A stretch of DNA of 64,000 nt, taken from positions 186,001 through 250,000 of IMG/VR virus record IMGVR_UViG_3300036760_000522, one strand, 5' to 3'. Below the pieces are notes generated by a model. That model ran no database searches. It saw nothing but the letters and a program-made list of their open reading frames with translations, and was not told the origin of the DNA. The translations under genes and the position numbers were made by a program. How positions within the stretch are numbered: position 1 is the stretch's first letter; every line of letters starts with the position of its first letter. Shown one piece after another: positions 1,153 to 16,458 of the stretch.

Positions 1153-4100
1153 TCAACACAGAGGCGATCCTAGGGGTCCGCCGATCTTAAAACAGTACAA
1201 ATCAGCCGTCATTGAGATAGCGTCGGATACTCCGATATCGAACGATTGAGGTCCGGGATCCACGGATACGCGCACTACGCCAGCACCCGGATCCCGCTCA
1301 ATCCGGTAGGTGTGGTACCGACCGTCCAGATAGTCGAGACTGATGGCACCCAAATATTTCCCATCTTGCTGATCCGAGACAATCGCGAAGCGCTCTGCTA
1401 TCCCGGAAGTCAACAAAGCAATCGCGACTGTAAACCCTGGCGCAGAAATTCCGAACCGAATCTGTGTGTCCCCGACACCAAGTGTCGAATCTGCGGCAAC
1501 TCGCAGTCGGAAAACAGCCTCCGTGATGAGACCAGGAGCATCGAGCAGCGGTGTCGGATTACGATACACTGTTGCCCCACCGACCGTACCATAGGACAAC
1601 GCACCCCCAGCAACGCTCGCGGAAACATCCACAGGAACGTCGCTCACAAGCTCCCAAGGCGTCGGCGCCGTCGTGTCGTTCTCAGGCAGAACTGTGCCGT
1701 CGTATGTCAAACAGACTTCTCTAACGTACTGGAATCCTCCAAGCTCAGGTCCACACGAATCATCAGCCGGCGCGATCAGCGCCAGGGCCCCAGTCGATTG
1801 TTCGATGACATCCAAACACGAGTACAAAATGTCATCCGGCACTTCAAGTCGAATGCGTGTTGAACCGTCATTCAAAACGAAGTCACCGTCATTGTTGAGC
1901 ACGTCTTCGGGGTTGTTCAGGACCGAGACGAACTCTGTAACGACGTAAGGAGCACGCGTCTCAAAAGTCTGCGTACTCGGCACCAACGGCGTACCTTCAT
2001 TGAGTTGGGTCCAAGCAGGCAAGCCAGGGTCTGCTAAGAAGTCAGGGTCCTTCCTCGGAACAATGCCGGTCGAGCTAGACTTGAAACTTGTCAGCTCATG
2101 TGGCAAAACTGTGTAGAGGCGCTCAGGACTCTCCATCACGTTCCACTGGTTGATGACTTGATGATGTGGAGCAATACGGAGCTCGGTCGGGCTCCGAGTA
2201 ATCCCGTATCGAACGTAGTTCCAACTCGACTGACACAGGTTTTCTGGACTGAACGAACCAAACACGATCGCGGGTAACGCAGCTGACAACGTCAACACGA
2301 TCCCAGAACTGCTACCTGGCAAGTCAGTAGAACTGTAGCTGATCCTGATCAGCGGATTAGGATCAGAGTCGAGAAACAAATCGACTTCTCCTGTACTGTC
2401 CTTGGACAACCGATACTTGTGCGAAATTGACCAGTCAGTCTCGCGAAGAATGCGATAATCAACTAACGATGGAGCAAGAGGCCATGTTGACGGGATCGTC
2501 AGAGTTGTCGAGCTCCCAACGCCGGAAATTTCATAGACGCCCTTGTTGGCCCCCGCGTCGACAATCAACAAATCGCCTGCAACCACACCAGAACCAAAAA
2601 AGTCCGCTAGAGGGTCTCCCAAGGCGTTACCGTTGATAGCGACGTTCCGTCCTGTGATCTTGGTCGAGGTGTGGTAACCCGTTAAAGCGTTAGGGTCGTA
2701 ACCCTTCCAAATACCAACAAAGCGTTGTAGGTCCGACCGTACTCGCCAAGCGTTGCAGTAATGCCAGTCTGCGACCGAAATCGATCCAACACTTACAGGT
2801 GTTGCCGATCCGAACGAGACCATGGCGTCAGTCGGGACAGGAACAGTGAACGAACTGTAGGCAAGTGACCCTACAAAAGTCCCGTCAATAAACAATGACA
2901 CCAAATCACCTGTCGTACTCTTCGACAAACGATACGTGTGAGGGTCTCCGTCAAACCAATCGAATGCAAAACGTCCAGGGACAAAGGGAACACCATCCGA
3001 GCAAAACGTCACATAGCGTACTCCTGCCAAAATCTCGAATTGCACACCAACGGCTCTGGCCCCATCGTACGCTTGAGCAAAGACCCCCGCAAAGCCAGAG
3101 CCATCGACGGTGTAGGAAATTGCTTCAACTCGAAACTCGAAAATGTAATCGACTCCTGACGCAATCACCCGCTGGTCTGAGAGAACAGGTTCCAGGTCTT
3201 CAATGAAGTAGAGAACGCCATCTGCGACCGAAGCGTCCGTCAGTCGAAGAATTCGTCCCACCATTGCAACGGCACTGCCGCCCGTTCGGGTCCAAACATA
3301 GGGCGAGAAATCCTCAGGCAGAGAACGTCCTCCATAGCTCAGCTTCGGAACCGCAGCGTCAGCGAGAAAACAGACTTGTGTCAGACGTTGACTGTCATCT
3401 ACTGCGAACATCAAACCGTACGGGTCGACGCCGTGTGTTTGTGTTCGGCCTTGCACTTCAACATCCACCACGAACTGTGAGGCTGAAGTGAGCAGCGGTT
3501 CCAGGCGTACGAAGCCTCGGAAGTCACCACCTATCAAACCAACTTGTGTGGCAGTAGAGGTGTCAGTAGCGCTTGTTGAGTCAAGCAGCAGAGTGTTAGT
3601 CGCTAGGATTGTTTCCGTTCCGTGGAAACCAATTGGGATCCACGGCTTGGCGTCGACCTCAGGCTCAACATTCGCCTCGTAACTCACGAAGCTGGATGGT
3701 GCCGTCTGTAACGCATTGGTCGGCAGGACTAAATACCGAACGAAATCCCACGCAGACACACTCGCAGCAGGACGAGACACTGAACCAAAGAAAACGTCCT
3801 GAACTTCGTCGAATGGTGAAGCCAGCTCTTCCAGAAACGGGGCTTCAACAGCAAGGATACGCAGAGTCTCAACAACTTCACCATCGACATAGAGCCGGAC
3901 TGTCCCGGAAAGATCACGGTAGAATCTGTAGCTGTGCAACACCCCCCAATCAAAATTGGCAGGCAGATTGGTTGGGTTGCCGAGTGTATCGACTCCTCCT
4001 GTCCACGCAGACACTAAGGCAGGATTGTCAGCGGATCCGCGTTTCAAGAGTCCAATTTTCTTGACGCCGGCAACATCCAAAAACCCGATTACGAAAGCCG

Positions 4101-7100
4101 AGACATCTTCAGTGAAGCCAGCAGCCACTCCTGTAAAGACGCCGTCGAGCGTCGCAGAAGTGATCTGAAAGCGCCAAGAAAGAGCTAGGATGTGAGGGAA
4201 GGACGTGTCGACTGTTCGAGTCCAGAAAATTGGTTGTCCAAAAGGGAAAGCTCCCGTCGATGCATCGATCACCGTTAGGACGCCAGCAGACGTGCTCGTG
4301 GTGCCTGTTCCACGGCGTACCCAAGGGACAGAATCAAGCTCAGGTAGTGTCGTGGCTTCGTAACTTACGAACGACTCGTTGACAATTCGTGTTTCCGAAG
4401 GGTACGCGATCCGGTGCGTCGGGCTGTTGAGCAATAGAAGCGTCGGATCGTTCAGAACCGGAGTATAGGCTCTCTCATAAGCACGATAGTGCAATTCCCG
4501 AAGCTGAGGCGGGTCAAGAGGTGCCGAGATGTCGAGGGGTGTGTAGTCACTCGGACGAATCAAAACGTTTCGGTACTGGTAAACGTGAGCTGATCGTGGC
4601 GAGACGTTGTTGAGTCGAAACTCCTTCGAGTTCAAACGCCGGATCTCTACGGTTGGGTTGCAACACCAGCTGTAGTTCACAGACACGAAGTCGTCAGGGT
4701 CAGGAGTAGTAGGCAGGACCACCTGACCCAACAACCCAATCACAGCATCCGGCACAACAAGGTTGCCGTTGACGATGACTTCAACATCGGAAGGGTCATC
4801 TGCAATCTCACCGTTGCGCGGATCAAAGAGTTCCCAAAACAAGGTTCCGCTGGATGGTTCCGGAACAGTGAAACTTGCTTGCAAGCGTGCTTGCGTCGAA
4901 GACGGTACGGACAATATTTTGAAAGTACCGGAAACCGTCGAGTACACAGTTCGGCTACCCGAACCTGTAAACAGTTCCAGCTTCACACTGTCCGCCGCGG
5001 ACAGTGAATCGTTGATCTGAACAGCCAACCCGACCACGGACGAACTCGTTGTCGGTGGTAGCCCCAAAGATCCGAGACGTAAGTATAGACCAACATGTTG
5101 TGCTGTGAGTGTCGCACCAGGCAACGTTACCTGTGACACACTGGTGATCGAAGCCCCAGAGCCTCTTTGTAGAACCAGCGGAGGGCGGGCAATGGGACCG
5201 CGATCTGTGAAAACGCTGCGTACAGTCAAAGGAACAGAAGACGAGAAGATTGCGGTATTGAAAGTCGGATCGGTCGGGTTACCTGCCACGTCCGTAGGCG
5301 TACCCAAAATGTTGACCGCCAACTGATACGATCCACTTCCAAGTCCCAGTGTTTCTAGAGAAACGCTTTCTGGACTGGTCGACCACACACGCTTGATTGC
5401 AACGCTCGTAGGACCTGTGATCGAATACTCGACAGGCGTCGTGAGCACACCGTTGGTCCGCATCGGCTGGTCAAACACGACAGTCACAACGCCTTCGTCT
5501 GTGACCGTCGTAGACTGGACCTGAGGACCAAGAATACCTGATGTGTAAAACACGTGATCGAAATCAAACAACGTATCCGCTCGTGTGCGGAGACCTCGAA
5601 TCTCAAGCAAGTAGTTCGCTTGATTGGTCAGCTTGTTCGTCGTCTCAAAAGCTATCTGTTCGACGGCCGAGAGATGACGCCAGCTGAGCGATCCGTTCTG
5701 GGAGTCCACCAAAGGTAACCGACGATCGATCTGAACGTCAATTGTAGTTAGTCCAGCTGTCGAAGCAGAACCTGTTGTGACAGGAAAGTCTGTTCCGTTG
5801 ACGTTCACTTGGTCGGAAATACCGACGGTGTCTCCCGACACAATGATAGGACCGACCGAAACGATCCGATAGACCCCCGGCACACGACCATTAAGAATTT
5901 CAATGTAGGAACCAACATCGTGACCAATGAACCCCCCATCGAGACGCAAAGTGTCCGAAAGAAAGTTGAGGTCCTGTACGTTGACCAGTAACCCTGTACT
6001 GCCCGTTTGAAGCACGTTCGCGATAGGGTTCGCACGCTGAATGTGCGCGGGCACACCGCCAGGTAGTGCGAGAAGTCGGTAGTGCGTGAGATCTTGAACG
6101 CCTGCGAACATCAGCTCAGGCACGGTCAACGTGACCCCAAACCCGTCGCTCGAAACAACGACAGGCACAGGGGTCTCGAGTTCAACCGTTACAAATTCAA
6201 ATATTGTAACGACGTCTTCGAGAACTCGCACGTTATCGGAAACGCGTGTGACGCTGTCTGTGACCGTATCGGAATCAGACAGGATCCGATCGACCTCAGC
6301 ACGCTCGGCTAAGACAGTATCGCCGGCTGTGACGCTGTCTTCGAGGACACGTGCGTTGTCTGAGTCTCGAGCGATCTCGTCTGGAATGTCGAAAATCGTG
6401 TCGTCAACATCAATGTCTACATCGATCGACTCCGCCAAGACGGTGTCCGTCGGACTAGCTACAACATCCGACAAAGAGACATCGACCAGACGATTCAAGA
6501 GAACAGCCAGATCGTCAAAAACAACGAGTAGTTCGATGAACTCTCGTACCCAAGCGACATCGCGAAGAATCGTCTCCGTCAGCGCCAATGAATCTGAAAC
6601 AACGACGCCACGTTCAGCGGTAACAAAGACTTGATCGGTGACCGCCGCAGTATCCGCCAGTGAAATGGCAATGGCCACTGAAGCTGAAACTGAATCCAGT
6701 ACGGTATCTGTGTCGGTAGCGAATCGCTCGTAAGGGACATCGATCGAGAGTGTGTCGCCGATGGAAATTGTGTCGCTAGCAATACCTCCTAGAATCGTCT
6801 CTACAGTGGTTGTGTCAGCAGCAACAATCGCATCCGAAAATTCCCGCTCATACAAGTTCCCAGCACTAAGGAGTTCCGTCAGCGAGACAATGTCTGCGAC
6901 TACCCGCTCATAGAAGACGTCAAGGGCAGTCGAGTCCGCAGTCGAGTCAATATCTTCGGAACTTCGCTGAAACTCGGCAGTTCTCGTAAGTTCGTCAAAA
7001 ACCGAAATCGTGTCGGCAGGGAAGACTGTCTCAACCAACAAAGAGGTGTCCGAAACACTGATCGTGTCGGATGCTTCCCGGGCGGTATTAGCCTCGGTGC

Positions 7101-7641
7101 TGATCTGATCGGTAAAGCTTGGGGCGTCCGAAACATCTCGTACATAGTTAGTCGCAACTTCCAATTGGTCGGTGACGGAAATCGTGTCATCACCAGAAAC
7201 ATTGGGCTCTGAAGTGACCTGATCCGTGAGTGTCGCAGTGTCGCTCGCATCACGGACGTAATCCGTGCTTGCTGCGATCTCGTCAGTAAAGCTGACGTTG
7301 TCGTTTACTCCGTAGAATCCCTCGATGACCAGTTGGTCAGCGACACTGAAGACATCGCTGACGCTACGTACGTAGTTGGTTTCGGCGAGACGCTCATCAA
7401 CCGCGCCTAAAACATCCGGCGAAGGTGTTCTTTGGAAGTCTAGACTCGTAAGTGCCGTGTCAGCGACGGAATCTGAATCCGAAGCTGACCGGTCGTAAGC
7501 GCTGGCACTCGACCCTGTGTCTGTGGTCGAAACAACGGACTCGTCGATGGTCGCCGAGTAGAGCGTACCAGTCGACGTGACTTCGCTCAGCGTGTGCGGG
7601 TCCTCGACCGCAATGGAATCGCCTAGTGTAACGTCGATCAC
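1153..7641 (-). CDS. Giant virion structural protein (2162 aa): N-terminal Asp/Ser/Thr repeat stalk followed by Ig-like and repeated lectin-like beta-sandwich domains (baseplate/fibre associated)
   Basis: Long ORF with beta-rich composition; ~20-aa repeats in the first ~490 aa; four (S/T)YxxxxxPE ... HxYR modules. Confidence 0.8.
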   Translation of the reverse strand: MIDVTLGDSIAVEDPHTLSEVTSTGTLYSATIDESVVSTTDTGSSASAYDRSASDSDSVADTALTSLDFQRTPSPDVLGAVDERLAETNYVRSVSDVFSVADQLVIEGFYGVNDNVSFTDEIAASTDYVRDASDTATLTDQVTSEPNVSGDDTISVTDQLEVATNYVRDVSDAPSFTDQISTEANTAREASDTISVSDTSLLVETVFPADTISVFDELTRTAEFQRSSEDIDSTADSTALDVFYERVVADIVSLTELLSAGNLYEREFSDAIVAADTTTVETILGGIASDTISIGDTLSIDVPYERFATDTDTVLDSVSASVAIAISLADTAAVTDQVFVTAERGVVVSDSLALTETILRDVAWVREFIELLVVFDDLAVLLNRLVDVSLSDVVASPTDTVLAESIDVDIDVDDTIFDIPDEIARDSDNARVLEDSVTAGDTVLAERAEVDRILSDSDTVTDSVTRVSDNVRVLEDVVTIFEFVTVELETPVPVVVSSDGFGVTLTVPELMFAGVQDLTHYRLLALPGGVPAHIQRANPIANVLQTGSTGLLVNVQDLNFLSDTLRLDGGFIGHDVGSYIEILNGRVPGVYRIVSVGPIIVSGDTVGISDQVNVNGTDFPVTTGSASTAGLTTIDVQIDRRLPLVDSQNGSLSWRHLSAVEQIAFETTNKLTNQANYLLEIRGLRTRADTLFDFDHVFYTSGILGPQVQSTTVTDEGVVTVVFDQPMRTNGVLTTPVEYSITGPTSVAIKRVWSTSPESVSLETLGLGSGSYQLAVNILGTPTDVAGNPTDPTFNTAIFSSSVPLTVRSVFTDRGPIARPPLVLQRGSGASITSVSQVTLPGATLTAQHVGLYLRLGSLGLPPTTSSSVVGLAVQINDSLSAADSVKLELFTGSGSRTVYSTVSGTFKILSVPSSTQARLQASFTVPEPSSGTLFWELFDPRNGEIADDPSDVEVIVNGNLVVPDAVIGLLGQVVLPTTPDPDDFVSVNYSWCCNPTVEIRRLNSKEFRLNNVSPRSAHVYQYRNVLIRPSDYTPLDISAPLDPPQLRELHYRAYERAYTPVLNDPTLLLLNSPTHRIAYPSETRIVNESFVSYEATTLPELDSVPWVRRGTGTTSTSAGVLTVIDASTGAFPFGQPIFWTRTVDTSFPHILALSWRFQITSATLDGVFTGVAAGFTEDVSAFVIGFLDVAGVKKIGLLKRGSADNPALVSAWTGGVDTLGNPTNLPANFDWGVLHSYRFYRDLSGTVRLYVDGEVVETLRILAVEAPFLEELASPFDEVQDVFFGSVSRPAASVSAWDFVRYLVLPTNALQTAPSSFVSYEANVEPEVDAKPWIPIGFHGTETILATNTLLLDSTSATDTSTATQVGLIGGDFRGFVRLEPLLTSASQFVVDVEVQGRTQTHGVDPYGLMFAVDDSQRLTQVCFLADAAVPKLSYGGRSLPEDFSPYVWTRTGGSAVAMVGRILRLTDASVADGVLYFIEDLEPVLSDQRVIASGVDYIFEFRVEAISYTVDGSGFAGVFAQAYDGARAVGVQFEILAGVRYVTFCSDGVPFVPGRFAFDWFDGDPHTYRLSKSTTGDLVSLFIDGTFVGSLAYSSFTVPVPTDAMVSFGSATPVSVGSISVADWHYCNAWRVRSDLQRFVGIWKGYDPNALTGYHTSTKITGRNVAINGNALGDPLADFFGSGVVAGDLLIVDAGANKGVYEISGVGSSTTLTIPSTWPLAPSLVDYRILRETDWSISHKYRLSKDSTGEVDLFLDSDPNPLIRISYSSTDLPGSSSGIVLTLSAALPAIVFGSFSPENLCQSSWNYVRYGITRSPTELRIAPHHQVINQWNVMESPERLYTVLPHELTSFKSSSTGIVPRKDPDFLADPGLPAWTQLNEGTPLVPSTQTFETRAPYVVTEFVSVLNNPEDVLNNDGDFVLNDGSTRIRLEVPDDILYSCLDVIEQSTGALALIAPADDSCGPELGGFQYVREVCLTYDGTVLPENDTTAPTPWELVSDVPVDVSASVAGGALSYGTVGGATVYRNPTPLLDAPGLITEAVFRLRVAADSTLGVGDTQIRFGISAPGFTVAIALLTSGIAERFAIVSDQQDGKYLGAISLDYLDGRYHTYRIERDPGAGVVRVSVDPGPQSFDIGVSDAISMTADLYCFKIGGPLGSPLC
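6170..7641 (-). repeat. Protein-level tandem repeat, ~18-21 aa unit (x-D-x5-D-x7-Y-x-R), over 20 copies
   Basis: e.g. SDVFSVADQ, SDTATLTDQ, DDTISVTDQ, SDAPSFTDQ, SDTISVSDT; degenerate at DNA level. Confidence 0.85.
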
Positions 7642-7748: not shown

Positions 7749-8096
7749 TTGAACTGGGTTAAGCAGGAGAAGCGAAGGGACACGCGGAAATTGAAACAAA
7801 ACCACCAACGGCTCGCACACGAGCTCATGCAGTCACTGGGAAGCTGCCTCAAGCAGCCATTTCAACTTGTCGCTTACACTTCACACACGTCCCGAAATCC
7901 AGGCGCCGTCACATCGCTGTACTTCGTTGTGAGTTGTAAGCAAACCGACGTACGCGTTGATGTGACCTCCGACGGATTCGAAATCCAGCCCAACCAGGGG
8001 AACGCCAAGACACACACTACGGAGAGGGAACGCCACGATCAGAAGTCGTTGGTCGTACGCTTGCAAAGCTTACTCGACGGTTTCGGCCCGAACTGA
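7749..8096 (+). CDS. Hypothetical protein
   Basis: 115-aa ORF filling the gap at the start of the plus-strand island; start uncertain. Confidence 0.5.
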   Translation: MNWVKQEKRRDTRKLKQNHQRLAHELMQSLGSCLKQPFQLVAYTSHTSRNPGAVTSLYFVVSCKQTDVRVDVTSDGFEIQPNQGNAKTHTTERERHDQKSLVVRLQSLLDGFGPN

Positions 8097-8124
8097 GCGA
8101 AAGTGTTTTTGCTCTGTCTAGGTA

Positions 8125-8436: not shown

Positions 8437-8456
8437 TCATTGGTGTTTCAGTATCC

Positions 8457-9515
8457 GTGAAAGCACCGTTCCCGTACTTCGGCGGCAAAAGCCGGGTCGC
8501 TCAGGCTGTCTGGAAGGCGTTCGGAGAAAACGTACCGAACTACATAGAACCGTTCTGCGGGTCCTGTGCAGTGCTTCTTGCTCGCCCCGGTGGGCCCGGA
8601 AAGATTGAAACTGTCAACGACGGTTGTTCCTACATTTGCAATTTCTGGAGATCAATCAAACACAACCCACAAAAAACTGCCGAGTGGTGCGACTGGCCTG
8701 TGTCCGAACTCGATTTGCATGCACGTCACGCATGGCTCATCAAGCAGTCGATCGATCTCCGCGAGAAGCTCCGAGCTGATCCCGACTACCACGACGCCAA
8801 AATCGCAGGATGGTGGGTCTGGGGGATCTGCCAATGGATCGGAGGGGGTTGGTGCAAAACCCCCTACCAACAAAGGCCGCACCTACATGATGGCGACCGA
8901 GGTGTGAACGCGGCAGAAAAACAGCTGAAGCAACAAATCCCTGGGATCCACGCTTCCGGTGTGCACAGCTTTGGAACACGTCTCCCAGCTATCGGCAACG
9001 ATCGGGCGCTCAATGGCCTGACTGCATCACCGGCACTCGAATGGTTTCAAATGCTCTCACAACGCCTCAGGAGAGTTCGATTGGTCCACGGCGACTGGAC
9101 CAGGGTACTCGGGTCTTCGACGCTTGGGAAGGGCAGGAACGTCGGAGGAAGACGGCCTACAGCTGTTTTTCTCGACGCCCCTTACGACGACGAGTTACGG
9201 GACCCTGGACTCTACACTGAGGATACAAAAAACCTCTCAGTGAAAGTCCGCATTTGGGCCCTTGAGCACGGTGATGATCCAGACCTCAGGATCGCACTTT
9301 GTGGGCTTGCGTCGGAGCACGACGGCCACATGCCGGCGACTTGGCGTGTCCATCGTTGGACGGGGGCTTCCGGCTACTCACGTGGAAAAAACCGAAGTCG
9401 TACACGCCACGAAGAAACAATTTGGTTCAGTCCGCACTGCCTCCATGCCGAAATGGACGAAACACTTTCGGCGCTCCACAACTTCGATTCAATTTCAGAA
9501 GCCTCTGATTCGTAG
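8457..9515 (+). CDS. DNA adenine methyltransferase (D12/Dam-like)
   Basis: PFPYFGGKSR, YIEPFCGSCAV (motif I), VND and FLDAPY (DPPY variant). Confidence 0.85.
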   Translation: MKAPFPYFGGKSRVAQAVWKAFGENVPNYIEPFCGSCAVLLARPGGPGKIETVNDGCSYICNFWRSIKHNPQKTAEWCDWPVSELDLHARHAWLIKQSIDLREKLRADPDYHDAKIAGWWVWGICQWIGGGWCKTPYQQRPHLHDGDRGVNAAEKQLKQQIPGIHASGVHSFGTRLPAIGNDRALNGLTASPALEWFQMLSQRLRRVRLVHGDWTRVLGSSTLGKGRNVGGRRPTAVFLDAPYDDELRDPGLYTEDTKNLSVKVRIWALEHGDDPDLRIALCGLASEHDGHMPATWRVHRWTGASGYSRGKNRSRTRHEETIWFSPHCLHAEMDETLSALHNFDSISEASDS

Positions 9516-9523
9516 GTACTAAC

Positions 9524-9841
9524 ATGGCTTCCAAAATCACGATCGGCTGTAGCCCTTGGGGAGAAAACTGTGCACAGCTCGGACAACCCGGCTACGTTGA
9601 GCTCGCCCAGAGAGAGCTCAAGGCTTTCAAGGCTCAGCTAGAGCGTCACTTTGCCGCCAAACACAACGGCGCAAAGCCGACATGTCATCTTGTCATTGTC
9701 GGCAACGAACACGATTACGGGACATACTACGACGTCCAAGCCAGTTACCGAAACGGGACGGAAGAGGTCGACGCATTCTGGCTCGAGAGCAACACACCAG
9801 AAAACTGGGATGCTACAGCCACAGCCGAGCTCAACGCATGA
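9524..9841 (+). CDS. Hypothetical phage protein (HDYGTYYDV motif)
   Basis: Clean ORF 8 nt after the methylase; ATGA overlap with the next gene. Confidence 0.75.
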   Translation: MASKITIGCSPWGENCAQLGQPGYVELAQRELKAFKAQLERHFAAKHNGAKPTCHLVIVGNEHDYGTYYDVQASYRNGTEEVDAFWLESNTPENWDATATAELNA

Positions 9842-10083
9842 CTTTCACAGAATGGAAGCAAGCCTGCCTCACGACACTAGAAGATATCGGGCTACTCATC
9901 GATGACTTGTGGGATTCAGACGATCCTTACGAAGTCTTCCACATGAGCAGAGAGGCTTACAAAGCGCAACAAAGCCCGCGAAGTTTTGTCGAGGACATCT
10001 TCTCAGAGGAGATTGCGCGAGCTGAGGGCGAAGCTCAAGAACGGCGCGACGCGAACGCACACTACGTGGACAGCGAAGAATGA
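9838..10083 (+). CDS. Small acidic protein (81 aa)
   Basis: Start reassigned to ATG 9838 (ATGA overlap); 21 of 81 residues are Asp/Glu. Confidence 0.7.
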   Translation: MTFTEWKQACLTTLEDIGLLIDDLWDSDDPYEVFHMSREAYKAQQSPRSFVEDIFSEEIARAEGEAQERRDANAHYVDSEE

Positions 10084-10085
10084 AT

Positions 10086-10781
10086 TTAGATGTCGGCGTA
10101 ACCCCGGCCTCTTCGGGCACGAGGTCGAACCAGGAAGAATTCAAAAGATCCGTGAGTAGGAGACGCTACAGGTGTTCCGTGGACACCTGCGATTCCAACG
10201 TCGCGAAGCGTAATACCGCTCAAAGAAGTTCCTGGCGAGCCGTGGTTGAGCTTCCACCGACTCTGTAGACCGTTGACGATGTGATCGCTACCACGAGCCG
10301 CGAACAAAGCCTGGATCTCGTTGTCTGACAGAACCCTGGTGTAGAGCCGAATGTCTTCCAGGTAGCCGCCAAATGGGCGTCCACTGTCAACTGGACTAGC
10401 CCCGATTAGCAGATCAGATGTGTTAGTCCCAACCGAAGTTGGGACACCTCCAGAGCCATCCTCCACACCATTCACGTAGACTCGATGTTCCGTAGTGCCA
10501 TCTCGAATCCCGACAACAAAGTACGTTGTACTAGCCGAGATGGTTGTAGCCCCCGCAGCGACGGGATAGGACCCATTAAAAGTACCGAACTCTAAGACAT
10601 TGGAAGAGAGAACGCTGAATTCCCACCCTGATCCTGATCCTAGACTACCCTCTTTGGAGATGATCTCGTCGCGCGTTCCAGTGCTGTCACGACGAACCCA
10701 CGCCGTAACCGTCATGTTGTTCGTCGTCTCGTGATTGTCTGAGCAGTTGACCCAATTGGATCCGTTCAACAGGATCGACAT
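10086..10781 (-). CDS. LamG/concanavalin-A-like lectin domain protein
   Basis: MTVTAWV, RVYVNG, LLIGA, FGGYLEDIRLYTRVLSDNEIQAL: typical LamG_3 signature. Confidence 0.88.
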   Translation of the reverse strand: MSILLNGSNWVNCSDNHETTNNMTVTAWVRRDSTGTRDEIISKEGSLGSGSGWEFSVLSSNVLEFGTFNGSYPVAAGATTISASTTYFVVGIRDGTTEHRVYVNGVEDGSGGVPTSVGTNTSDLLIGASPVDSGRPFGGYLEDIRLYTRVLSDNEIQALFAARGSDHIVNGLQSRWKLNHGSPGTSLSGITLRDVGIAGVHGTPVASPTHGSFEFFLVRPRARRGRGYADI

Positions 10782-10891: not shown

Positions 10892-11380
10892 TCAGGTAAC
10901 TCGCGCTCTGTAGGTGATTCGGAGCTTGTCTGCCGTAGTCTTGTTTACTGCCGTGAACGTCGACCGAGACAAAGCCGAACCACCAGGGCTCGTGTTCTGG
11001 TTCAACACAACAACCTCACGGATGTTGGTCGCCGACTTCGTACCGCCGCCAGACGGATACGAGATCACCCACTGGAACGTTCTGGTGGCCGCCAGAAGGG
11101 TTTTGCTGTCGACGGTATTCAACGTACCGGTCACAGGTGTAACCACGTTGGTCTGACCGCTGTTGGCAGCAACGCCCGACGTTCCGATCCTCATCTGATC
11201 GAAGTCGTTGGTATTGAGGCCTGTGGCCTGGCGCCAGATTTGGCGCTTGCCTGTGTTGACGACCAAGTTCAACGCGGTCCGGCGTTGAACGACCTTTGGC
11301 CCGTGCTTTCCAGAACGAATGACTTCAACTGTGAAGATCCCGCGGGCCGTCAGGGTCTCCGTTGCTTCGATGGGCTGCAT
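10892..11380 (-). CDS. Thr-rich tail-collar/fibre subunit-like protein (162 aa)
   Basis: Start reassigned to ATG 11380 (GGAGG SD upstream); NLVVNTG and IREVVVLN...SRSTFTAVNKT...LRITY resemble tail-collar fibre domains. Confidence 0.65.
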   Translation of the reverse strand: MQPIEATETLTARGIFTVEVIRSGKHGPKVVQRRTALNLVVNTGKRQIWRQATGLNTNDFDQMRIGTSGVAANSGQTNVVTPVTGTLNTVDSKTLLAATRTFQWVISYPSGGGTKSATNIREVVVLNQNTSPGGSALSRSTFTAVNKTTADKLRITYRARVT

Positions 11381-13223
11381 TGAGTGTTTCCTCCAACAGT
11401 TTGATATTGGCTTGCGCCTCCTCGAACGCCACGGATTCGGCATCGTCTGGAAGCAGCTCTAACACTCTGCGAGCGTAATAAAGACTTTCGTCGAGCTTCC
11501 CCAATTCAGCAAAAACAGTGGTCAGCCGCTGGCACGGCAGCCAGGTATAGCTAGCCATGTCGATCCACCAGATTGTGAAGGGTGGTTGCCCTATCGTGGT
11601 CGAAGCGTAGAGGTAGAAAGAAAGGGCTTCCTCGTAACGCTCAGCAATGTAAGCCAAATCTCCGAGACGTAGCCAATGCTCAGTCCGGCTCCAATCGTCT
11701 TCAGTGGCACGAATCAACACCTCTCGGGCCTTCCCCCATTGCTGTTCCGCGGTGTAAAGCTTCGCAAGCACAAGTCGTGTGTGATACCTGAGAGGCCCAT
11801 TCTTGGGAGGCAACGACAAGAACTCTTCAAGTCGTGCAATCGCACGCTTCGGGTCGTGTTCGCGCCACTCAGCTCCCAAATAGTGTAGCGAGTTTTCGTT
11901 GCGATTCGTGATCCAGTCATCCATCAGTGATTTGCGGTTCTGGACTTTCCTCTGCTTCTGTCGTGCCAGCTCACGGTCCTTTGCTCGTTCGTGTAAAGTT
12001 TGAACCTGTGGAAGTGTGATCGCCAAGTAGTCCGGCGGATAGTCCAACGTATTGTGTGTACCACGTGTGTAGCGAATCTTCGGGTCATTACGGCAGAGCC
12101 AAGGAAACACCCACCGTTGACCTGTACCTGTACGAAAAACAACGCCAACTTTCGCGCCCTTCGGCATCTGATCAAGACCGAGCAATGCTTCGAAACCTGA
12201 AATCAGACGCTCATGACCTTCCGTCATGAAAATCCAGTCAGACGTGCAATGGTCCAGGCACTGATTGCGGACCCACGCAAAATGGATCTGCTTTTGGATT
12301 TTCTCCTCGTCAGAAACTATCTCACCCAGTTCAATGAGATCCATCTTCGGCGGACCTGAAGGCTGATCCAAATCAAATACGACATCCGCGTACTTCTCAG
12401 CAATCTCTCGCGTGTTGTCGACAGTTCTCGGATCGATTCCGATCACCATCTCATCAGCGACTCCGCGAAAGCTCGCAAGCGTTGCTTCAAGGTCCTCAGC
12501 CTCGTCACGGACAGGCATCGTCACAGACAATGTGAACGACTTAGGGAAACCGCAGACCGCCAACAAATACGGGCCGAGTACCTCGATCCGCACATCTTTG
12601 AAGTATTGTGCCAAGTCACGCTTGAAGCTCATGGCATTGTATTTCACTGTGTGCTGAGGTTCTTCATCAGGACCCAGACGATCATTCGGTACCGAGAGTA
12701 ACGCTCGTCCCTCTTGAGCCGCCAACTTGAAAATCAAAGCCCGCGTCTCAGCAGACATGTGTTCGACGAACTCTGTCGCTACTACTATTGCTGGGGACTC
12801 TTCGTGAATCAGGTCACCGTTGGTTCCAACTAAGGCACGATGCGACAGCGCACGACGTATTTCACTTTCCTGATTCAAATCCGCGACTACCGTCTCGAGG
12901 TCTTTTTCCTTCGCTTGTTGCAAAGCCTCCGTGCTGTGGTCAACAACCAGGACATTGGCCTTACGGGTGTCTCTGAGACGCGCTCCCAATACCCCAGTAC
13001 CTCCACCGAGATCTACGACACGGGCATGGTACGGGAGAATGCGTTCAATCCTCGTGTACACTTGGCTCAACGCTTGTTTACGCCATTCCTCTTGATCCTT
13101 GTCTTTCCAAAGACGATTCCAAAGATCCGGCGAGTTCGCCAGACGCGCCTGACGCTCTGCCATAGCTGCATCCAAGGCAGCCCTGTCCGCCGTGACCGTA
13201 CCGGTCACATCTGAGGTATCCAT
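11325..13223 (-). CDS. SAM-methyltransferase + GT2 glycosyltransferase + TPR fusion
   Basis: VVDLGGGTG and TEFVEH (class I MTase); LSVTMPVRDEAEDL...FAWVRN...DWIF (GT2); C-terminal TPR-like helices; AAGGAG SD. Confidence 0.85.
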   Translation of the reverse strand: MDTSDVTGTVTADRAALDAAMAERQARLANSPDLWNRLWKDKDQEEWRKQALSQVYTRIERILPYHARVVDLGGGTGVLGARLRDTRKANVLVVDHSTEALQQAKEKDLETVVADLNQESEIRRALSHRALVGTNGDLIHEESPAIVVATEFVEHMSAETRALIFKLAAQEGRALLSVPNDRLGPDEEPQHTVKYNAMSFKRDLAQYFKDVRIEVLGPYLLAVCGFPKSFTLSVTMPVRDEAEDLEATLASFRGVADEMVIGIDPRTVDNTREIAEKYADVVFDLDQPSGPPKMDLIELGEIVSDEEKIQKQIHFAWVRNQCLDHCTSDWIFMTEGHERLISGFEALLGLDQMPKGAKVGVVFRTGTGQRWVFPWLCRNDPKIRYTRGTHNTLDYPPDYLAITLPQVQTLHERAKDRELARQKQRKVQNRKSLMDDWITNRNENSLHYLGAEWREHDPKRAIARLEEFLSLPPKNGPLRYHTRLVLAKLYTAEQQWGKAREVLIRATEDDWSRTEHWLRLGDLAYIAERYEEALSFYLYASTTIGQPPFTIWWIDMASYTWLPCQRLTTVFAELGKLDESLYYARRVLELLPDDAESVAFEEAQANIKLLEETLNAAHRSNGDPDGPRDLHS

Positions 13224-13268: not shown

Positions 13269-14093
13269 TCAGCGGTCTTCGCGCCGACGTGGAGGTGTGG
13301 GATTGACGACAAAATGCTCAATCGTCTCAGGTTGCGTTCGCGGGATCACTTGCGTTCGCGCAGGGGCTGCATTTGTGAATGCCGGGGGTGGTCGTCGCTT
13401 GACCAGGATCGCAGTCAAATCAGATTCGCCTGTAAGCGTCGCTGACAAGATCCCATTGACCCACGAATACGTCTCGTCCGAGGTCGTGAACACGTCGAGC
13501 ACTGGAGCCCGATCATAGGCAGCTGCTGTACTTGTTTCGTCTGACGCAGCAACTGAGTCTTGGGGAAAGACGTCTTTGGCAAGACCTGCGGCCAAAGACT
13601 CAGCGACAGTAATCGTGTCTGAAAGTGTCAACGCGACGTCGATCGCGTAAGCCACTGAATCCGCCAACAACGCAGAATCCGAAACAACGCGCCCTAGCTC
13701 TGTCGCCGCCGAAACAGTGTCGGTAGTCGACATGTTGTCTGTCGACGTACTTTCCTGAACGAGTCCTGCTGTGATGCTGTCGGCAACAACTGCTGCATCC
13801 CCTAACGTGTATTGGTACTCTGCGGCAAGGGCGACTAGGTCTGGGTCCAAAGACAGTACATCATCTGAGGATCTGCCGTACGCCAGGCTTCCTGCTGCGG
13901 TATCCGGATCCAAAGAAGCTGTGTCGCCGAAAACACGCTCGTAGCTCAAGTCATCCAACAATGTATCGGTTGACGTATCCTCATCTTCCGAAGGCTGGCG
14001 GTCAAACATCGATGTACCTGTCGACAACAAATCGAACGCGGGTTCGTCGAGAACGCCAACAAGTTCGTCCGAAGTCACATCAAAAAGTGCCAT
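13269..14093 (-). CDS. Acidic repeat structural protein (same ~20-aa D-x5-D repeat as the giant protein)
   Basis: GDAAVVADS, TDNMSTTDT, SDSALLADS, SDTITVAES and others; Pro/Arg-rich tail. Confidence 0.8.
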   Translation of the reverse strand: MALFDVTSDELVGVLDEPAFDLLSTGTSMFDRQPSEDEDTSTDTLLDDLSYERVFGDTASLDPDTAAGSLAYGRSSDDVLSLDPDLVALAAEYQYTLGDAAVVADSITAGLVQESTSTDNMSTTDTVSAATELGRVVSDSALLADSVAYAIDVALTLSDTITVAESLAAGLAKDVFPQDSVAASDETSTAAAYDRAPVLDVFTTSDETYSWVNGILSATLTGESDLTAILVKRRPPPAFTNAAPARTQVIPRTQPETIEHFVVNPTPPRRREDR

Positions 14094-14101: not shown

Positions 14102-14491
14102 TCACACACAAAAACTGGAACGCAAACCTTGTTCGACAAAGCTCGGCAAGTTCACAACATCGAACCCCAGTGTTATCCGTTGCGACGGAGATGGGGCAAA
14201 AGCAAAATCGAGGACCCAACGGCCAAGCGACGAAGGAAAAAAGCGGATGCCGTAGCTTGACGAAGGCATCTCCGCCCAGTAAACCGAACCTGCGACGATC
14301 AAGCCGTCCGCAACACCGACACCGTCGACCAGGGTCCAACCAACCGCCTGGTTGTTGACCGTCAATGTGAATCCAATGCTCGCCGGCAAGAGACCGGTGA
14401 CTGGATTGAAGAAGTCCGAATTGAAGATATCAACCTGATCGAAGACGACCTGGTTGATTTGTACCGACCGATTGCGAAACGTCGCAGCCAT
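14102..14491 (-). CDS. Hypothetical beta-rich structural protein
   Basis: 129-aa ORF tightly packed in the operon. Confidence 0.7.
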   Translation of the reverse strand: MAATFRNRSVQINQVVFDQVDIFNSDFFNPVTGLLPASIGFTLTVNNQAVGWTLVDGVGVADGLIVAGSVYWAEMPSSSYGIRFFPSSLGRWVLDFAFAPSPSQRITLGFDVVNLPSFVEQGLRSSFCV

Positions 14492-14502: not shown

Positions 14503-14889
14503 TCACGTCTCGGCAATGCTGAAAAACCCAGCCGGGAAAAATACGACATTGCCAATGTCGATGTCCTTCGGGGTAGCCAGGTCACCAAAGTAGAGCATGT
14601 TGCCAGCCGTCAACGCGTCGTACACTTTGACACCTACGGCAGGATTACCCCAAGCTTCAAGAGGAGTCGGAAACGTGATCGGAGCCGAGATGCTCGACAC
14701 GTTCAACACAGGTACAGCAAACGCCATGAGTTGCCGCACGTAAGACGGAGCAGTGACTTCCAATCCACCGCCAGCGCTTGTCGGAGCGGTCGTCGTAAGA
14801 GCCAAATACCAAGCGGTCGGAGGCGTGAAAAGGATCCCCCGAAGATTGTGATTCAGGTTTGCGACTCGCAAATAATCGCTCTTGTTCAC
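14503..14889 (-). CDS. Small phage tail-fibre-type protein
   Basis: YLALTTTAPTSAGGGLEV...SYVRQ...ITFP...YDALTAGNMLYFG pattern common to small phage fibre proteins; GGAGG SD. Confidence 0.75.
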   Translation of the reverse strand: MNKSDYLRVANLNHNLRGILFTPPTAWYLALTTTAPTSAGGGLEVTAPSYVRQLMAFAVPVLNVSSISAPITFPTPLEAWGNPAVGVKVYDALTAGNMLYFGDLATPKDIDIGNVVFFPAGFFSIAET

Positions 14890-14913: not shown

Positions 14914-15195
14914 TCAGGCGTGACAGGCGGCTTTGAGGTTCTTCAACGTCGTTGCGTACGGGAGAGCTGCAACCTTGCCCTGACTCGAGTACCAACCGTT
15001 TCGCAAGGAGTCGAAGTTAGCCAGGCTCGTGTCGAGAACGAAAGTCGTTTTGTTGTTTGCCTTTTCCGTCCGCAGCAGCGGGCATCCAGCAACAGACAAG
15101 TAGGCCGCGAAATACAAGTCAGTAGTTTTGTACTGAGGAGAAGGCGTTGAGTTGGGTTCTGATTTTTGCGGTGAGTTGGGTTCTGATTTTTCCAT
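14914..15195 (-). CDS. DUF5659-like small protein
   Basis: YKTTDLYFAAYL...TTFVL motif. Confidence 0.7.
   Translation of the reverse strand: MEKSEPNSPQKSEPNSTPSPQYKTTDLYFAAYLSVAGCPLLRTEKANNKTTFVLDTSLANFDSLRNGWYSSQGKVAALPYATTLKNLKAACHA
15148..15191. repeat. 20-bp direct repeat, period 24 bp (KSEPNS x2)
   Basis: TGAGTTGGGTTCTGATTTTT at 15148 and 15172. Confidence 0.9.
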
Positions 15196-15288: not shown

Positions 15289-16458
15289 CTACAAAATGTT
15301 GATCGTAGGAGCCGAGTCCGTCACTGCCATTGTATCCCCCAACACAACATCGAGTGAATTGATGGATACTTGTGAGGATACGTGTCCTCGAACTTGCACA
15401 CGAACCAGCGTGGCCAACGTAAGACCTGAAACCAACGAAGCCGGAACCACGATTGAAGTCGCCGAAACGGATCCACCTGCCTGCTCAATTCGAACCTGAT
15501 CAAGCCGAATGATCGTCTGTCCTGTAATCAACTGAACGACAGTTTCCTTGCTGTCGAACGAGCCAAGGCCTACACCCGTAATCGTCACGGTCCCAGCCAA
15601 AACCACGAGTGTGATGTTGGGCAGTGGCGCAGTGAAGAGCGAAACTCCGTCGTCTTGTATCACAGACACAGCAGCGCCATTGGGCAAACCGCGACGAGAA
15701 TCTGGGTTGAAAGCTGAACTCCGATAGCCAAAAATCTGGCCCACCATGAAGCTTTCAACTGCGACAGTGGTTTCGATAAACTGCGGCGCAATCGCGTCCG
15801 CCAAATTCTCATGCGTACCACGACTCGTTGGCACCAAAGACAAAGCAGATGAATTGGTGCTTGCGCCAACCCCACTGATCGTTGCGACCGACACGTCTAA
15901 AACTCCGGCAACCGGGTTCAAAGCCGTGATGTACGTCGCAGCAGCAGGCATCGTCCGAGCAAGAGCCGCAGCACCAAGACCGAGAGGTGTGTTCGCAACA
16001 GACCCGTTCGCAACAGAGTCAATTTCCACATAGGAAGAGACTCCATGTGGACCTTCCAGAGCGACTCTGGAACCGCTTCCTGTGCCTTGGCGTGCGGTGA
16101 CACCCAAGGCAGTCAAAACCGTGTTGAGAGCGGCCAGAAGCGTTGTCAGTGAAGCGTACGCCGCTTGCGGTACAAGTACGACGGTGAACGATGATGCTGA
16201 GCTCGTTCGAATCCGCAAGTCGTCGTTACCTGCATTGATCGTCAACGGAAAGGATCCGACAATGTCAGATCCTTGGATGGTAGCTCCCGCCCCTGTCGTG
16301 GCGTGTGCCAAGACAGCTTCAACTTCCGCCACCGTGGGCCGTCCCACATAACGCTCTTGACCACGAGGCTCAACAGGGGCTCGATGTTGTGAGATGGGTT
16401 CTACGTCTCCGATGAGAAGAGGCCCCGGTAGATCGCCACGAACAACTCCTAAACGCAT
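15289..16458 (-). CDS. Virion structural protein with C-terminal IPT/TIG-like Ig domain
   Basis: Ala/Gly/Ser/Thr/Val rich; TVTITGVGL...GGSVSATSIVV; paralogous ends with 16838..17443. Confidence 0.75.
   Translation of the reverse strand: MRLGVVRGDLPGPLLIGDVEPISQHRAPVEPRGQERYVGRPTVAEVEAVLAHATTGAGATIQGSDIVGSFPLTINAGNDDLRIRTSSASSFTVVLVPQAAYASLTTLLAALNTVLTALGVTARQGTGSGSRVALEGPHGVSSYVEIDSVANGSVANTPLGLGAAALARTMPAAATYITALNPVAGVLDVSVATISGVGASTNSSALSLVPTSRGTHENLADAIAPQFIETTVAVESFMVGQIFGYRSSAFNPDSRRGLPNGAAVSVIQDDGVSLFTAPLPNITLVVLAGTVTITGVGLGSFDSKETVVQLITGQTIIRLDQVRIEQAGGSVSATSIVVPASLVSGLTLATLVRVQVRGHVSSQVSINSLDVVLGDTMAVTDSAPTINIL

What the first reader, a model, noticed from the sequence alone, without database searches (positions are those of the whole stretch)
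1200..15360. A portable ~20-aa D-x5-D motif is used both as long arrays and as single inserts in several virion proteins
Seen: over 20 tandem copies at the N-terminus of the 2162-aa protein and about 10 in 13269..14093. Isolated single copies also sit in apparent linker or loop positions: IIVSGDTVGISDQVNV (~5800-5850), VQINDSLSAADSVKL (~4980-5025), FDIGVSDAISMTAD (~1200-1243) and the extreme C-terminus of 15289..16458 (LDVVLGDTMAVTDS). The N-terminus of the 162-aa fibre-like protein (IEATETLTARG) has a similar pattern. Inference: the motif is a docking or donor beta-strand that recruits a subunit, perhaps the 162-aa protein, so the phage plants appendages wherever the motif is inserted.
Basis: partly seen in the sequence, partly recalled or inferred. 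Interest (0 to 1): 0.72.

Follow-up and report, generated by a model that had tools for sequence, protein, structure and literature searches.

The report
Acidic docking repeats for phage bead-fibres
A metagenomic jumbo phage carries more than 100 copies of an undescribed 20-residue acidic repeat in at least seven virion proteins. The repeat is almost always encoded beside one highly conserved small basic protein with the fold of known fibre "beads", so it is probably the string of unusually long beads-on-a-string fibres.

Summary
The repeat is real and more widespread than reported. It has a period of 20 aa, with cross-family consensus R-x3-D-x5-D and a conserved strand S-D-T-[IV]-S-V-T-D. The 301.5-kb phage has about 116 copies in seven proteins. 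Related arrays occur in 2,582 protein clusters, in no Pfam or PHROG family, and in none of 50,697 GenBank phages.

Three of the four "single copies" are lineage-specific additions: one loop insertion and two C-terminal tails. Each is only modestly above chance. The claimed copy at the N-terminus of the 162-aa protein is not supported.

The docking idea is indirectly supported, with the 162-aa protein as the likely partner. That protein:
- is 70-87% identical across phages;
- is strongly basic (+12), while the arrays are acidic (about -3 per unit);
- has a predicted Gp80-like "bead" fold;
- lies in a conserved cassette, methyltransferase-glycosyltransferase-TPR enzyme, then p162, then array protein, in about 22 of 25 loci.

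A canonical Gp80 gene sits beside the small 274-aa array. This parallels the chain-like fibres of phages GP4, A1002 and Bas63.

Binding is untested. The single complex prediction, run with Gp80-like, gave no answer. A self-folding beta-solenoid remains a live rival.

The parts
6172..7641 (-). N-terminal repeat array of the 2162-aa virion protein (aa 1-490). It has about 21 units of 20 aa and begins with a 'cap' unit, MIDVTLGDSIAVED.
   Evidence: Seed HMM finds 15 units of 9-20 bits plus weaker ones. Spacing is 20 or 18 aa. The N-terminal cap motif is conserved in array-bearing homologues.
1153..7641 (-). 2162-aa giant virion protein: the array followed by several ConA/LamG-like domains.
   Evidence: 263 homologues of 1225-3322 aa on contigs up to 475 kb. 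The number of N-terminal units ranges from 0 to more than 14 among them.
5767..5853 (-). Single unit no. 1 (aa 597-625, ...IIVSGDTVGISDQVNV...): a lineage-specific loop insertion.
   Evidence: Absent from all aligned homologues, including those 63% identical. Present in the 91%-identical L013 orthologue. Weight-matrix score 9.5 bits. No DNA donor elsewhere in the genome.
4978..5022 (-). Motif-like strand no. 2 (aa 874-888, VQINDSLSAADSVKL). It may be a conserved core strand of a sub-clade segment rather than an inserted unit.
   Evidence: The segment is present and conserved in a subset of homologues, including the array-less P0028 and P0043, and is missing from the rest. Score 8.8 bits.
1156..1251 (-). 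C-terminal extension (aa 2131-2162) carrying single unit no. 3 (FDIGVSDAISMTAD).
   Evidence: Most homologues end at ...VRVSIDS. P0018 has an array here, and P0010 has repeats plus an extra domain. Score 8.2 bits.
10086..10781 (-). 231-aa Laminin_G_3 (ConA-like) protein between p162 and the big array protein. In other phages the LamG domain is fused to the array.
   Evidence: Pfam PF13385, E 1.6e-27. P0171 and P0177 are LamG+array fusions. Synteny.
10892..11380 (-). p162: a 162-aa, highly conserved, basic protein with a predicted Gp80-like fold. Proposed bead that docks on the repeat units.
   Evidence: phrog_5417, function unknown. 436 homologues at 70-87% identity. Net charge +12, pI 11.35. 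Fold matches: 8jou_a Z 5.3; Atlas clusters containing PF23140 at TM 0.68-0.89 and feature score 0.96. Lies upstream of an array gene in about 22 of 25 loci.
11325..13223 (-). 632-aa methyltransferase + family-2 glycosyltransferase + TPR protein. Its end overlaps the p162 start by 56 nt, and it is the invariant first gene of the cassette.
   Evidence: Pfam Methyltransf_23, Glycos_transf_2 and TPR_14. Its orthologue lies immediately upstream of p162 in 20 of the 25 IMG/VR loci, and also in L007, L039 and L040.
13269..14093 (-). 274-aa 'rope-only' protein: N-terminal cap unit, 8-10 repeat units, and a basic proline-rich C-terminal tail.
   Evidence: Orthologues of 182-295 aa keep the order Gp80, p129, small array in L013, L015 and L022/L023.
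14102..14491 (-). 129-aa protein of unknown function, always found between Gp80-like and the small array protein.
   Evidence: Synteny. No Pfam or PHROG hit. Atlas gives only weak leads.
14503..14889 (-). 128-aa canonical Gp80-family protein, the fibre-I 'bead' of phage GP4. GTG start.
   Evidence: Pfam PF23140, 102.6 bits against a cut-off of 27. PDB 8jou_a, E 3.7e-5. 30 homologues of 126-130 aa.
15289..16458 (-). 389-aa protein with a C-terminal Ig-like domain. Possible anchor or collar for the array proteins.
   Evidence: Translation. Orthologues at 54-57% identity in L014 and L022.
15292..15360 (-). C-terminal 23-aa tail of the 389-aa protein carrying a cap-type unit (LDVVLGDTMAVTD). It shares 8 of 13 residues with the big protein's N-terminus.
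   Evidence: The tail is absent from the 54-57% orthologues and present in the 94%-identical one. Score 9.3 bits. Shuffle P = 0.035.

Best explanation
The 20-aa acidic unit is the docking segment of a 'rope'. Its local consensus is [YF]-x-R-[ST]-[AV]-S-D-T-[IV]-S-V-T-D followed by about 8 variable residues.

Proposed mechanism:
- Each unit offers one short beta-strand that inserts into the open beta-sandwich of a small bead protein by beta-sheet augmentation. A tandem array therefore becomes a beads-on-a-string fibre.
- The main bead is p162 (10892..11380), a basic protein with a Gp80-like fold that is encoded beside array genes in many phages.
- The canonical Gp80-family protein (14503..14889) probably dresses the small 274-aa rope protein encoded two genes downstream of it.
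- Arrays grow and shrink freely at protein termini. Single units added at a terminus or in a loop would plant one bead, or link proteins through the same strand pairing.
- The adjacent methyltransferase-glycosyltransferase-TPR enzyme probably modifies the bead or the Ser/Thr-rich strand.

Shown here: the repeat, its distribution, the synteny, the charges, and the lineage-specific indels.
Inferred: the p162 fold (moderate confidence), the binding, the one-bead-per-unit stoichiometry, and the modification.
For: 1. A solved precedent exists. Gp80-type dimers bind tandem segments of a rope or fibre-dock domain by beta-augmentation in GP4, A1002 and Bas63 (PMC13730344, PMC12609058). The A1002 rope spends about 15 residues per bead monomer.
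2. The proteins encoded just after gp80 in GP4, Bcep22 and Itty13 also have their strongest self-similarity at lag 20.
3. The window encodes a true Gp80-family protein. The order Gp80, p129, small array is conserved in the window's phage and four related IMG/VR loci (L013, L015, L022, L023).
4. p162 and arrays are linked in about 22 of 25 loci found with p162. They are also linked in 5 of 6 informative loci found with arrays.
5. The p162 fold resembles Gp80. VIA-align ranks 8jou_a fourth of 48,161 chains (Z 5.3, covering chain residues 3-138). Atlas shape TM is 0.68 to a cluster containing PF23140. 23 of the 100 nearest named feature clusters contain PF23140 (score 0.96). A confident model of the top Atlas feature hit (not shown to be a relative of p162) aligns at TM 0.70/0.89 to a 124-aa Gp80 cluster over residues 37-160.
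6. The charges are complementary: p162 is +12 (pI 11.35) and the arrays are -75 over 460 aa.
7. p162 is 70-87% identical across phages whose other virion proteins are 50-63% identical. This fits a hub that must fit many different units.
8. Within a unit, every position of the 9-residue strand is conserved on both faces, while the remaining roughly 8 residues vary. That is the pattern of a docking strand plus linker.
9. Units are gained and lost at termini and in loops.
Against: - No binding evidence exists. The single complex prediction (Gp80-like x2 with three units) scored ipSAE 0.01, and the tool itself labels that as no answer.
- The AlphaFold2 monomer model of a 260-aa array is a regular two-strands-per-unit beta structure. 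Its weak matches are all beta-solenoids, but pLDDT is only 62 and nothing is significant.
- The arrays have no sequence similarity to the glycine/alanine-rich candidate ropes of GP4 or Bcep22.
- I could not confirm from the PDB that those candidates are the rope.
- The p162 model is of moderate quality (pLDDT 64), and Z 5.3 alone is within the range of chance.
- hhalign finds no p162-Gp80 sequence relationship.
- Arrays of 47 or more units would make fibres several times longer than any seen so far.
Confidence: 0.5

Rival explanations
1. The array folds on its own into a two-strands-per-coil beta-solenoid rod of 20 residues per turn, like curli CsgA or calcium-dependent beta-helices. It serves as a rigid acidic stalk or spacer. 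The Asp and Arg residues form ladders or bind cations at the turns. p162 is then an anchor, chaperone or unrelated neighbour.
For: The AlphaFold2 model has regular 6-7-residue strands every 10 residues, with pTM 0.51. Its weak Foldseek hits are all solenoids: Awp1, tapirin, MpAFP, CsgA and RTX proteins. Conserved charged residues at the ends of the strands, together with an aromatic at position 2, suit a turn-and-core pattern.
Against: Confidence is low: pLDDT is 62, and the five models range from 30 to 62. No hit is significant. AlphaFold tends to turn beta-rich repeats into solenoids (my own knowledge). A solenoid explains neither the single terminal or loop units, nor the strict conservation of both faces of one strand beside a variable second half, nor the tight linkage to a basic protein with a Gp80-like fold.
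Confidence: 0.25
2. The arrays are mainly substrates for modification. They would be Ser/Thr-rich, mucin-like fibres glycosylated and methylated by the adjacent methyltransferase-glycosyltransferase-TPR enzyme. p162 would be a co-factor or a second substrate. This could be true together with either structural model.
For: The enzyme gene is the invariant first gene of the cassette and overlaps the p162 start. The conserved strand carries three to four Ser/Thr residues per unit. Virion glycosylation by phage-encoded transferases is known in mycobacteriophages (my own knowledge, not checked here).
Against: Nothing shows what the enzyme's target is. The enzyme is also present in locus L014, where no array was found nearby. 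Modification alone does not explain the strict 20-residue period or the conserved Asp, Asp and Arg residues.
Confidence: 0.15
3. Three chains intertwine into a trimeric fibre shaft, either a triple beta-spiral or a triple beta-helix as in adenovirus and reovirus fibres or T4 fibres, with the 20-aa unit as the shaft repeat.
For: Each unit has two beta-strands. The arrays occur in fibre-like proteins, for example at the N-terminus of the 1262-aa protein that has His-x-His fibre repeats.
Against: The Gly/Pro turn signature of triple beta-spirals is absent. The arrays sit next to monomer-type LamG and Ig-like domains. A trimeric shaft does not account for p162 or for single units. It was not tested, because no multimer run was left.
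Confidence: 0.07

Closest known systems
Chain-like fibre I of Ralstonia podophage GP4 (gp80 dimers on a separate rope protein; PDB 8JOU; Zheng et al. 2023, J Mol Biol 435:168258)
   Same: The window has a true Gp80-family gene (PF23140) and, two genes downstream, a small protein made almost only of tandem units of about 20 aa. In GP4, gp80 is followed by a 325-aa protein with 20-residue periodicity. In both phages the genes lie downstream of the head genes.
   Different: The repeat here is acidic (R-x3-D-x5-D), not glycine/alanine-rich, and shows no sequence similarity. The arrays reach about 50 units, against about 10. They also sit on giant multidomain proteins. The commonest partner is p162, not Gp80.
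Nozzle-rope gp39 with gp40/gp41 beads of Pseudomonas podophage A1002 (PMC13730344)
   Same: The rope is a domain of a larger structural protein. There are two bead proteins of the same fold with almost no sequence identity, as with Gp80-like and p162 here. Each bead augments its sheet with a rope segment, at about 15 residues per monomer.
   Different: A1002 has 11 dimers on a nozzle protein of a podophage. Here there are seven rope-bearing proteins in a 301-kb phage. The bead is strongly basic, and a modification enzyme is part of the cassette.
Collar-whisker complex of myophages Bas63 and Sf14 (PMC12609058)
   Same: The rope is a short terminal extension of an Ig-like protein, and whisker dimers sit on it 'like beads on a string'. 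Compare the 389-aa protein here, whose Ig-like domain is followed by one terminal unit.
   Different: Bas63 has only two dimers per rope. The extension there is N-terminal rather than C-terminal. The sequences are unrelated.
Beta-solenoid repeat proteins (curli CsgA, RTX beta-rolls, calcium-dependent antifreeze beta-helices)
   Same: Roughly 18-23 residues per coil, two strands per repeat, and Asp-rich turns. These are the weak structural neighbours of the array model.
   Different: No significant structural or sequence match. Those proteins fold alone and have no dedicated bead partner.

Membership tests
Gp80 / fibre-I bead family (Pfam PF23140) | Sequence match to the family model above the curated cut-off | tested here: met
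   Window 14503..14889 scores 102.6 bits against a cut-off of 27. It also matches PDB 8jou_a at E 3.7e-5.
Gp80 / fibre-I bead family (Pfam PF23140), applied to p162 | Sequence match to the family model | tested here: not met
   p162 has no Pfam hit. hhalign of the p162 family against the Gp80 family gives probability 0.2%.
Gp80-like fold (structural class), applied to p162 | N-terminal helix plus an incomplete beta-sandwich that superposes on gp80 | tested here: inconclusive
   8jou_a gives Z 5.3 over 106 residues, ranking 4th of 48,161 chains. Atlas TM is 0.68-0.89 to clusters in which 12-16% of members carry PF23140, with feature score 0.96. The p162 model's pLDDT is only 64.
Rope / fibre-dock of chain-like fibres | Tandem docking segments, roughly 12-22 residues per bead monomer | tested here: met
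   Period 20 dominates in this phage and in 149 representative proteins. A1002 uses about 15 residues per monomer. The GP4 candidate rope peaks at lag 20.
Rope / fibre-dock of chain-like fibres | Encoded next to the bead gene | tested here: met
   The order p162 then array holds in about 22 of 25 loci and in 5 of 6 reverse contexts. The order Gp80, p129, small array holds in the window's phage and four related loci (L013, L015, L022, L023).
Rope / fibre-dock of chain-like fibres | Each segment completes a bead's beta-sandwich (beta-augmentation) | tested here: inconclusive
   Complex prediction with Gp80-like x2 and three units gave ipSAE 0.01, reported by the tool as 'no answer'.
Rope / fibre-dock of chain-like fibres | Sequence homology to a known rope | tested here: not met
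   The arrays match no PDB chain and none of 50,697 GenBank phage records. The GP4 and Bcep22 candidates are Gly/Ala-rich.
Self-folding beta-solenoid | Confident stacked-coil model or a significant match to a solved solenoid | tested here: inconclusive
   The model has pLDDT 62 and pTM 0.51. The best PDB match has E 0.68, and all weak hits are solenoids.

The most novel reading that the evidence does not exclude
The 20-aa acidic unit is a portable address tag for one universal basic bead, p162. By expanding, shrinking or transplanting units, these phages would build bead-coated and possibly glycosylated fibres of any length, up to about 50-90 beads. That is several times longer than any chain-like fibre seen so far. 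They could also plant single beads on capsid-proximal or fibre proteins. This would be a general, evolvable way of building virion appendages, spread over thousands of uncultured phages of 40-475 kb.
Probability: 0.3. Interest if true: 0.8.

Novelty: new variant of a known kind. Interest (0 to 1): 0.66.

Why it matters
Chain-like fibres were first described in 2023 and are known from only four or five cultured phages, with 2-11 bead dimers each. If this reading is right:
- the same principle operates on a much larger scale in a large uncultured phage clade;
- it uses a new acidic rope repeat, a new basic bead and a dedicated modification enzyme;
- the rope unit behaves as a movable module.

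It would assign a function to a very common 'hypothetical' phage protein family (phrog_5417) and to thousands of giant repeat proteins. It would also supply a simple peptide-tag and bead pair that could be tested for displaying proteins on phage. If instead the arrays are solenoid stalks, the finding is still an unannotated and abundant repeat family, but a less surprising one.

Tried and rejected
- Tandem Repeats Finder on the DNA found nothing relevant, because the repeats are diverged at nucleotide level.
- Pfam and PHROGs have no family for the arrays.
- Megablast and tblastn of the region and the array against GenBank phages found no match.
- phmmer of the array against the PDB gave only spurious Dps hits.
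- Complex prediction with Gp80-like x2 and three units gave no answer. With hindsight, p162 was the better partner to test.
- I first assumed Gp80 was the general partner of the arrays. I rejected this as a general rule, because no Gp80 gene lies within 8-10 kb of eight other array genes, and only 4 of 25 p162 loci carry one.
- Bcep22 gp61 and the GP4 325-aa protein could not be confirmed in the PDB as the rope.
- The search for related loci with the array alignment or the array protein failed to give usable loci.
- hhalign of p162 against Gp80 found nothing.
- A DNA-level donor for the single units was not found.
- HMMER local domain scores proved unreliable for single 13-aa units, so I replaced them with an ungapped weight matrix and shuffles.
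- Cluster look-ups returned no organism or product names.
Full report
CONTEXT. The window is bases 186001-250000 of a 301,550-bp IMG/VR virus record with direct terminal repeats, so it comes from a jumbo phage assembled from a metagenome. It has no nucleotide match in 50,697 GenBank phage records. All the genes of interest lie on the minus strand. They sit downstream of a head module: large terminase 37809..39794, portal 33724..35565, and prohead protease 29148..30566.

THE ARRAYS ARE REAL.
- The 2162-aa ORF (1153..7641) carries 15 strong and about 6 weak units between aa 45 and 490. Spacing is 20 residues, sometimes 18.
- The 274-aa ORF (13269..14093) carries 8-10 weaker units.
- The repeats are too diverged at DNA level for Tandem Repeats Finder.
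- The local consensus from 51 units is x-[YF]-x-R-[ST]-[AV]-S-D-T-[IV]-S-V-T-D-[TQ]-x-x-V-x-L.
- A six-frame HMM scan and a weight-matrix scan of the whole genome found further carriers outside the window:
  - a 1337-aa protein with about 47-50 units;
  - a 525-aa protein with about 15-21 units;
  - a 197-aa protein with 5 units;
  - an 813-aa protein with 5 internal units and one near its N-terminus;
  - a 1262-aa tail-fibre-like protein with 3 units at its extreme N-terminus;
  - a 244-aa protein with one strong unit (20.4 bits) at its extreme C-terminus.
- In all there are about 116 strand motifs in seven proteins.

THE REPEAT FAMILY IS LARGE AND UNANNOTATED.
- phmmer with the biggest array against 1.84 billion representative proteins found 2,582 clusters at E <= 1e-3 and 793 at E <= 1e-10.
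- A period of 20 dominates in these proteins.
- The consensus across families is D-x5-D-x9-R-x3.
- In 661 units from 149 representative proteins, R4 is 81% conserved, D8 99% and D14 95%. Every position of the strand S-D-T-V-S-V-T-D-S is conserved, while the other roughly 8 residues vary. That sample was selected with my seed HMM, so it is biased toward the consensus.
- No Pfam or PHROG family covers the arrays. Laminin_G_3 is the only recurrent companion domain.

THE SINGLE COPIES. All four are at the stated coordinates.
- They score 8.2-9.5 bits on the weight matrix. About a dozen unrelated windows in roughly 80,000 score as well.
- Shuffling gives P = 0.0075 for the big protein's core and P = 0.035 for the 389-aa protein.
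- Comparison with homologues is more telling. I aligned 32 of the 263 homologues of the big protein.
  - Copy 1 (aa 597-625) is an insertion seen only in this phage and a 91%-identical relative.
  - Copy 3 (aa 2131-2162) lies in a tail beyond the conserved C-terminus. At that position one homologue carries a full array, and another carries repeats plus an extra domain.
  - The 389-aa protein's 23-residue C-terminal tail with its unit is missing from orthologues 54-57% identical.
  - Copy 2 sits in a segment conserved in a sub-clade and may simply be a core strand.
- The terminal single copies resemble a distinct 'cap' version of the unit, [LF]-D-[VI]-x-[LV]-x-D-x-I-x-V-x-[DE]. This cap opens nearly every array-bearing homologue and also the 274-aa protein.
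- Among orthologues of the big protein, the number of N-terminal units runs from none to more than 14. Many that look array-less keep one to three E-x5-E units at positions near 10, 30 and 50. 23% have two or more such units in the first 120 residues, against 2.8% of core windows.
- No DNA donor for the single units exists elsewhere in the genome.
- The alleged copy at the N-terminus of the 162-aa protein is not supported.

WHICH SUBUNIT IS THE PARTNER?
- ORF 14503..14889 is a true member of Pfam Gp80, 'podophage GP4 fiber I protein' (102.6 bits; PDB 8jou_a, E 3.7e-5).
- The published structures show how this family works.
  - In GP4, five gp80 dimers are strung on a separately encoded rope protein.
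  - In Bas63, whisker dimers wrap a collar's terminal rope 'like beads on a string', and the rope completes the whiskers' incomplete sandwiches (PMC13730344, PMC12609058).
- In the window's phage and four related loci, the gene order Gp80, 129-aa protein, small array protein is conserved.
- Gp80 is not the general partner, however. No Gp80 gene lies near eight other array genes, and only 4 of 25 p162 loci carry one.
- The general partner is the 162-aa protein, p162 (10892..11380; phrog_5417, function unknown).
  - 25 IMG/VR loci were retrieved with p162. The repeat HMM finds an array ORF downstream on the same strand in 18.
  - Counts of Asp-Asp pairs at lags 6 and 20 reveal diverged arrays in four or five more. 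Two loci are cut off right after p162, and only one clearly lacks an array.
  - In the reverse direction, 5 of 6 informative contexts of array proteins have p162 upstream, on contigs of only 44-81 kb.
- The conserved cassette is: methyltransferase-glycosyltransferase(GT2)-TPR enzyme, then p162 with overlapping or abutting reading frames, then zero to three small genes that are sometimes LamG proteins, then the array protein.

WHAT p162 IS.
- It has 436 homologues at 70-87% identity. It is therefore much better conserved than the big protein (50-63%) or Gp80-like (50-60%).
- It is very basic (net +12, pI 11.35). The arrays are very acidic (-75 over 460 residues, about -3.3 per unit). Gp80-like is near neutral.
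- Sequence profiles do not link it to Gp80.
- Its AlphaFold2 model has pLDDT 64 and pTM 0.62. It shows an N-terminal hairpin, a helix, and then a beta-sandwich.
- The model matches GP4 gp80 over almost the whole gp80 chain (Z 5.3, rank 4 of 48,161).
- It matches Atlas clusters that contain PF23140 members at TM 0.68.
- By language-model features, 23 of the 100 nearest named clusters are Gp80-containing (score 0.96). A confident model of the top feature hit, which is not shown to be a relative of p162, aligns at TM 0.70/0.89 to a 124-aa Gp80 cluster over residues 37-160.
- I read p162 as a divergent Gp80-fold bead with an extra N-terminal hairpin, with moderate confidence.

PERIODICITY OF KNOWN ROPES.
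- The proteins encoded directly after gp80 in GP4 (325 aa), Bcep22 (gp61) and Itty13 (284 aa) show their strongest self-similarity at lag 20.
- I infer that these are the ropes, but could not confirm it. They match no PDB chain by sequence, possibly because the rope was deposited without sequence.
- The A1002 rope uses about 331 residues for 22 monomers.

MECHANISM AND RIVALS.
- Best explanation (confidence 0.5): each unit is a docking strand plus linker for one bead. p162 dresses the large arrays, and Gp80-like dresses the small rope protein. Terminal or loop units plant single beads or link proteins. The enzyme modifies one of the components.
- Main rival (0.25): the array folds alone as a 20-residue-per-turn beta-solenoid.
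  - This is what a monomer AlphaFold2 model suggests. It has pLDDT 62, strands every 10 residues, and only weak hits, all of them solenoids.
  - It does not explain the single units, the conservation of both faces of one strand, or the p162 linkage.
- A modification-substrate role (0.15) can coexist with either structural model.
- A trimeric shaft (0.07) was not tested.
- The one complex prediction available (Gp80-like x2 with three units) returned 'no answer', which counts neither for nor against binding.

VERDICT.
Binding remains to be shown.
- Relative to known chain-like fibres this is a new variant. It has a new acidic rope repeat with thousands of members, a new basic bead, arrays up to about 50 units on giant multidomain proteins, a portable unit, and an associated modification enzyme.

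Noticed in passing
window 11325..13223 (-): A 632-aa methyltransferase + GT2 glycosyltransferase + TPR protein is the invariant gene immediately upstream of p162 in nearly all related loci, and it overlaps the p162 start by 56 nt. This suggests that a virion protein is glycosylated or methylated. The target is unknown.
   Followed up: partly
window 7749..10083 (+): A block of plus-strand genes is wedged between the LamG gene and the big array gene, in an otherwise minus-strand structural operon. It includes a 352-aa ORF (8457..9515) whose N-terminus looks like a Dam-type DNA adenine methyltransferase. That reading is from the sequence and my own knowledge, not tool-tested. The same block is present in the 97%-related locus L013.
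   Followed up: no
window 14503..14889 (-): The public gene call for the Gp80-like gene is a 74-aa fragment (P0121). Homologues are 126-130 aa, and the full 128-aa ORF starts at a GTG codon.
   Followed up: yes
window 24172..26070 (-): A 632-aa ORF combines PHROG hits to a LAGLIDADG homing endonuclease, HNH endonucleases and DNA methyltransferases. It may be a mobile-element-laden or intein-containing gene.
   Followed up: no
window 19763..21031 (-): The 422-aa protein ends in two to three tandem copies of a roughly 25-aa Lys/Glu-rich unit (GDPTENMSEEDKKKWEANQFKKKEA).
   Followed up: no
window 15144..15191: An exact-ish 24-bp tandem duplication (2.0 copies, 95% match) lies at the start of the 93-aa DUF5659 gene (14914..15195).
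   Followed up: no
genome 42398..43972 (-), just upstream of locus L002: The 525-aa array protein contains an exact 25-aa duplication (VEVYDTIYAGDGLHIDFWYEVEASA, twice) after its array.
   Followed up: no
genome 179046..181484 (-) and L002 7945..8538 (+): A Trp/Gly-rich N-terminal motif (GWGGGAWGD / HWGRNWGDGG) precedes the first unit in the 813-aa and 197-aa proteins. Similar motifs open several array-less homologues of the big protein, for example P0020 and P0031. This may be a second anchoring signal.
   Followed up: no
p162 homologues P0343, P0346, P0351, P0362, P0369 and others: About a quarter of the p162 homologues are 200-223 aa long and carry an N-terminal hydrophobic, helix-like extension. 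This could be a membrane or assembly signal, or a mis-called start codon.
   Followed up: no
L002 7049..7933 (+), genome about 51048..51932: A 294-aa ORF with patatin-like phospholipase motifs (GGGSKG...GVSVGA) sits inside the fibre and array gene cluster. The assignment is from the sequence and my own knowledge, not tool-tested.
   Followed up: no
window 13269..13400 (-), C-terminus of the 274-aa protein: The small rope proteins share a conserved basic, proline-rich C-terminal tail (...KRRPPP...P.TQPE..EHFVVNP.PPRR). It is probably the anchor that fixes the rope to the virion.
   Followed up: partly
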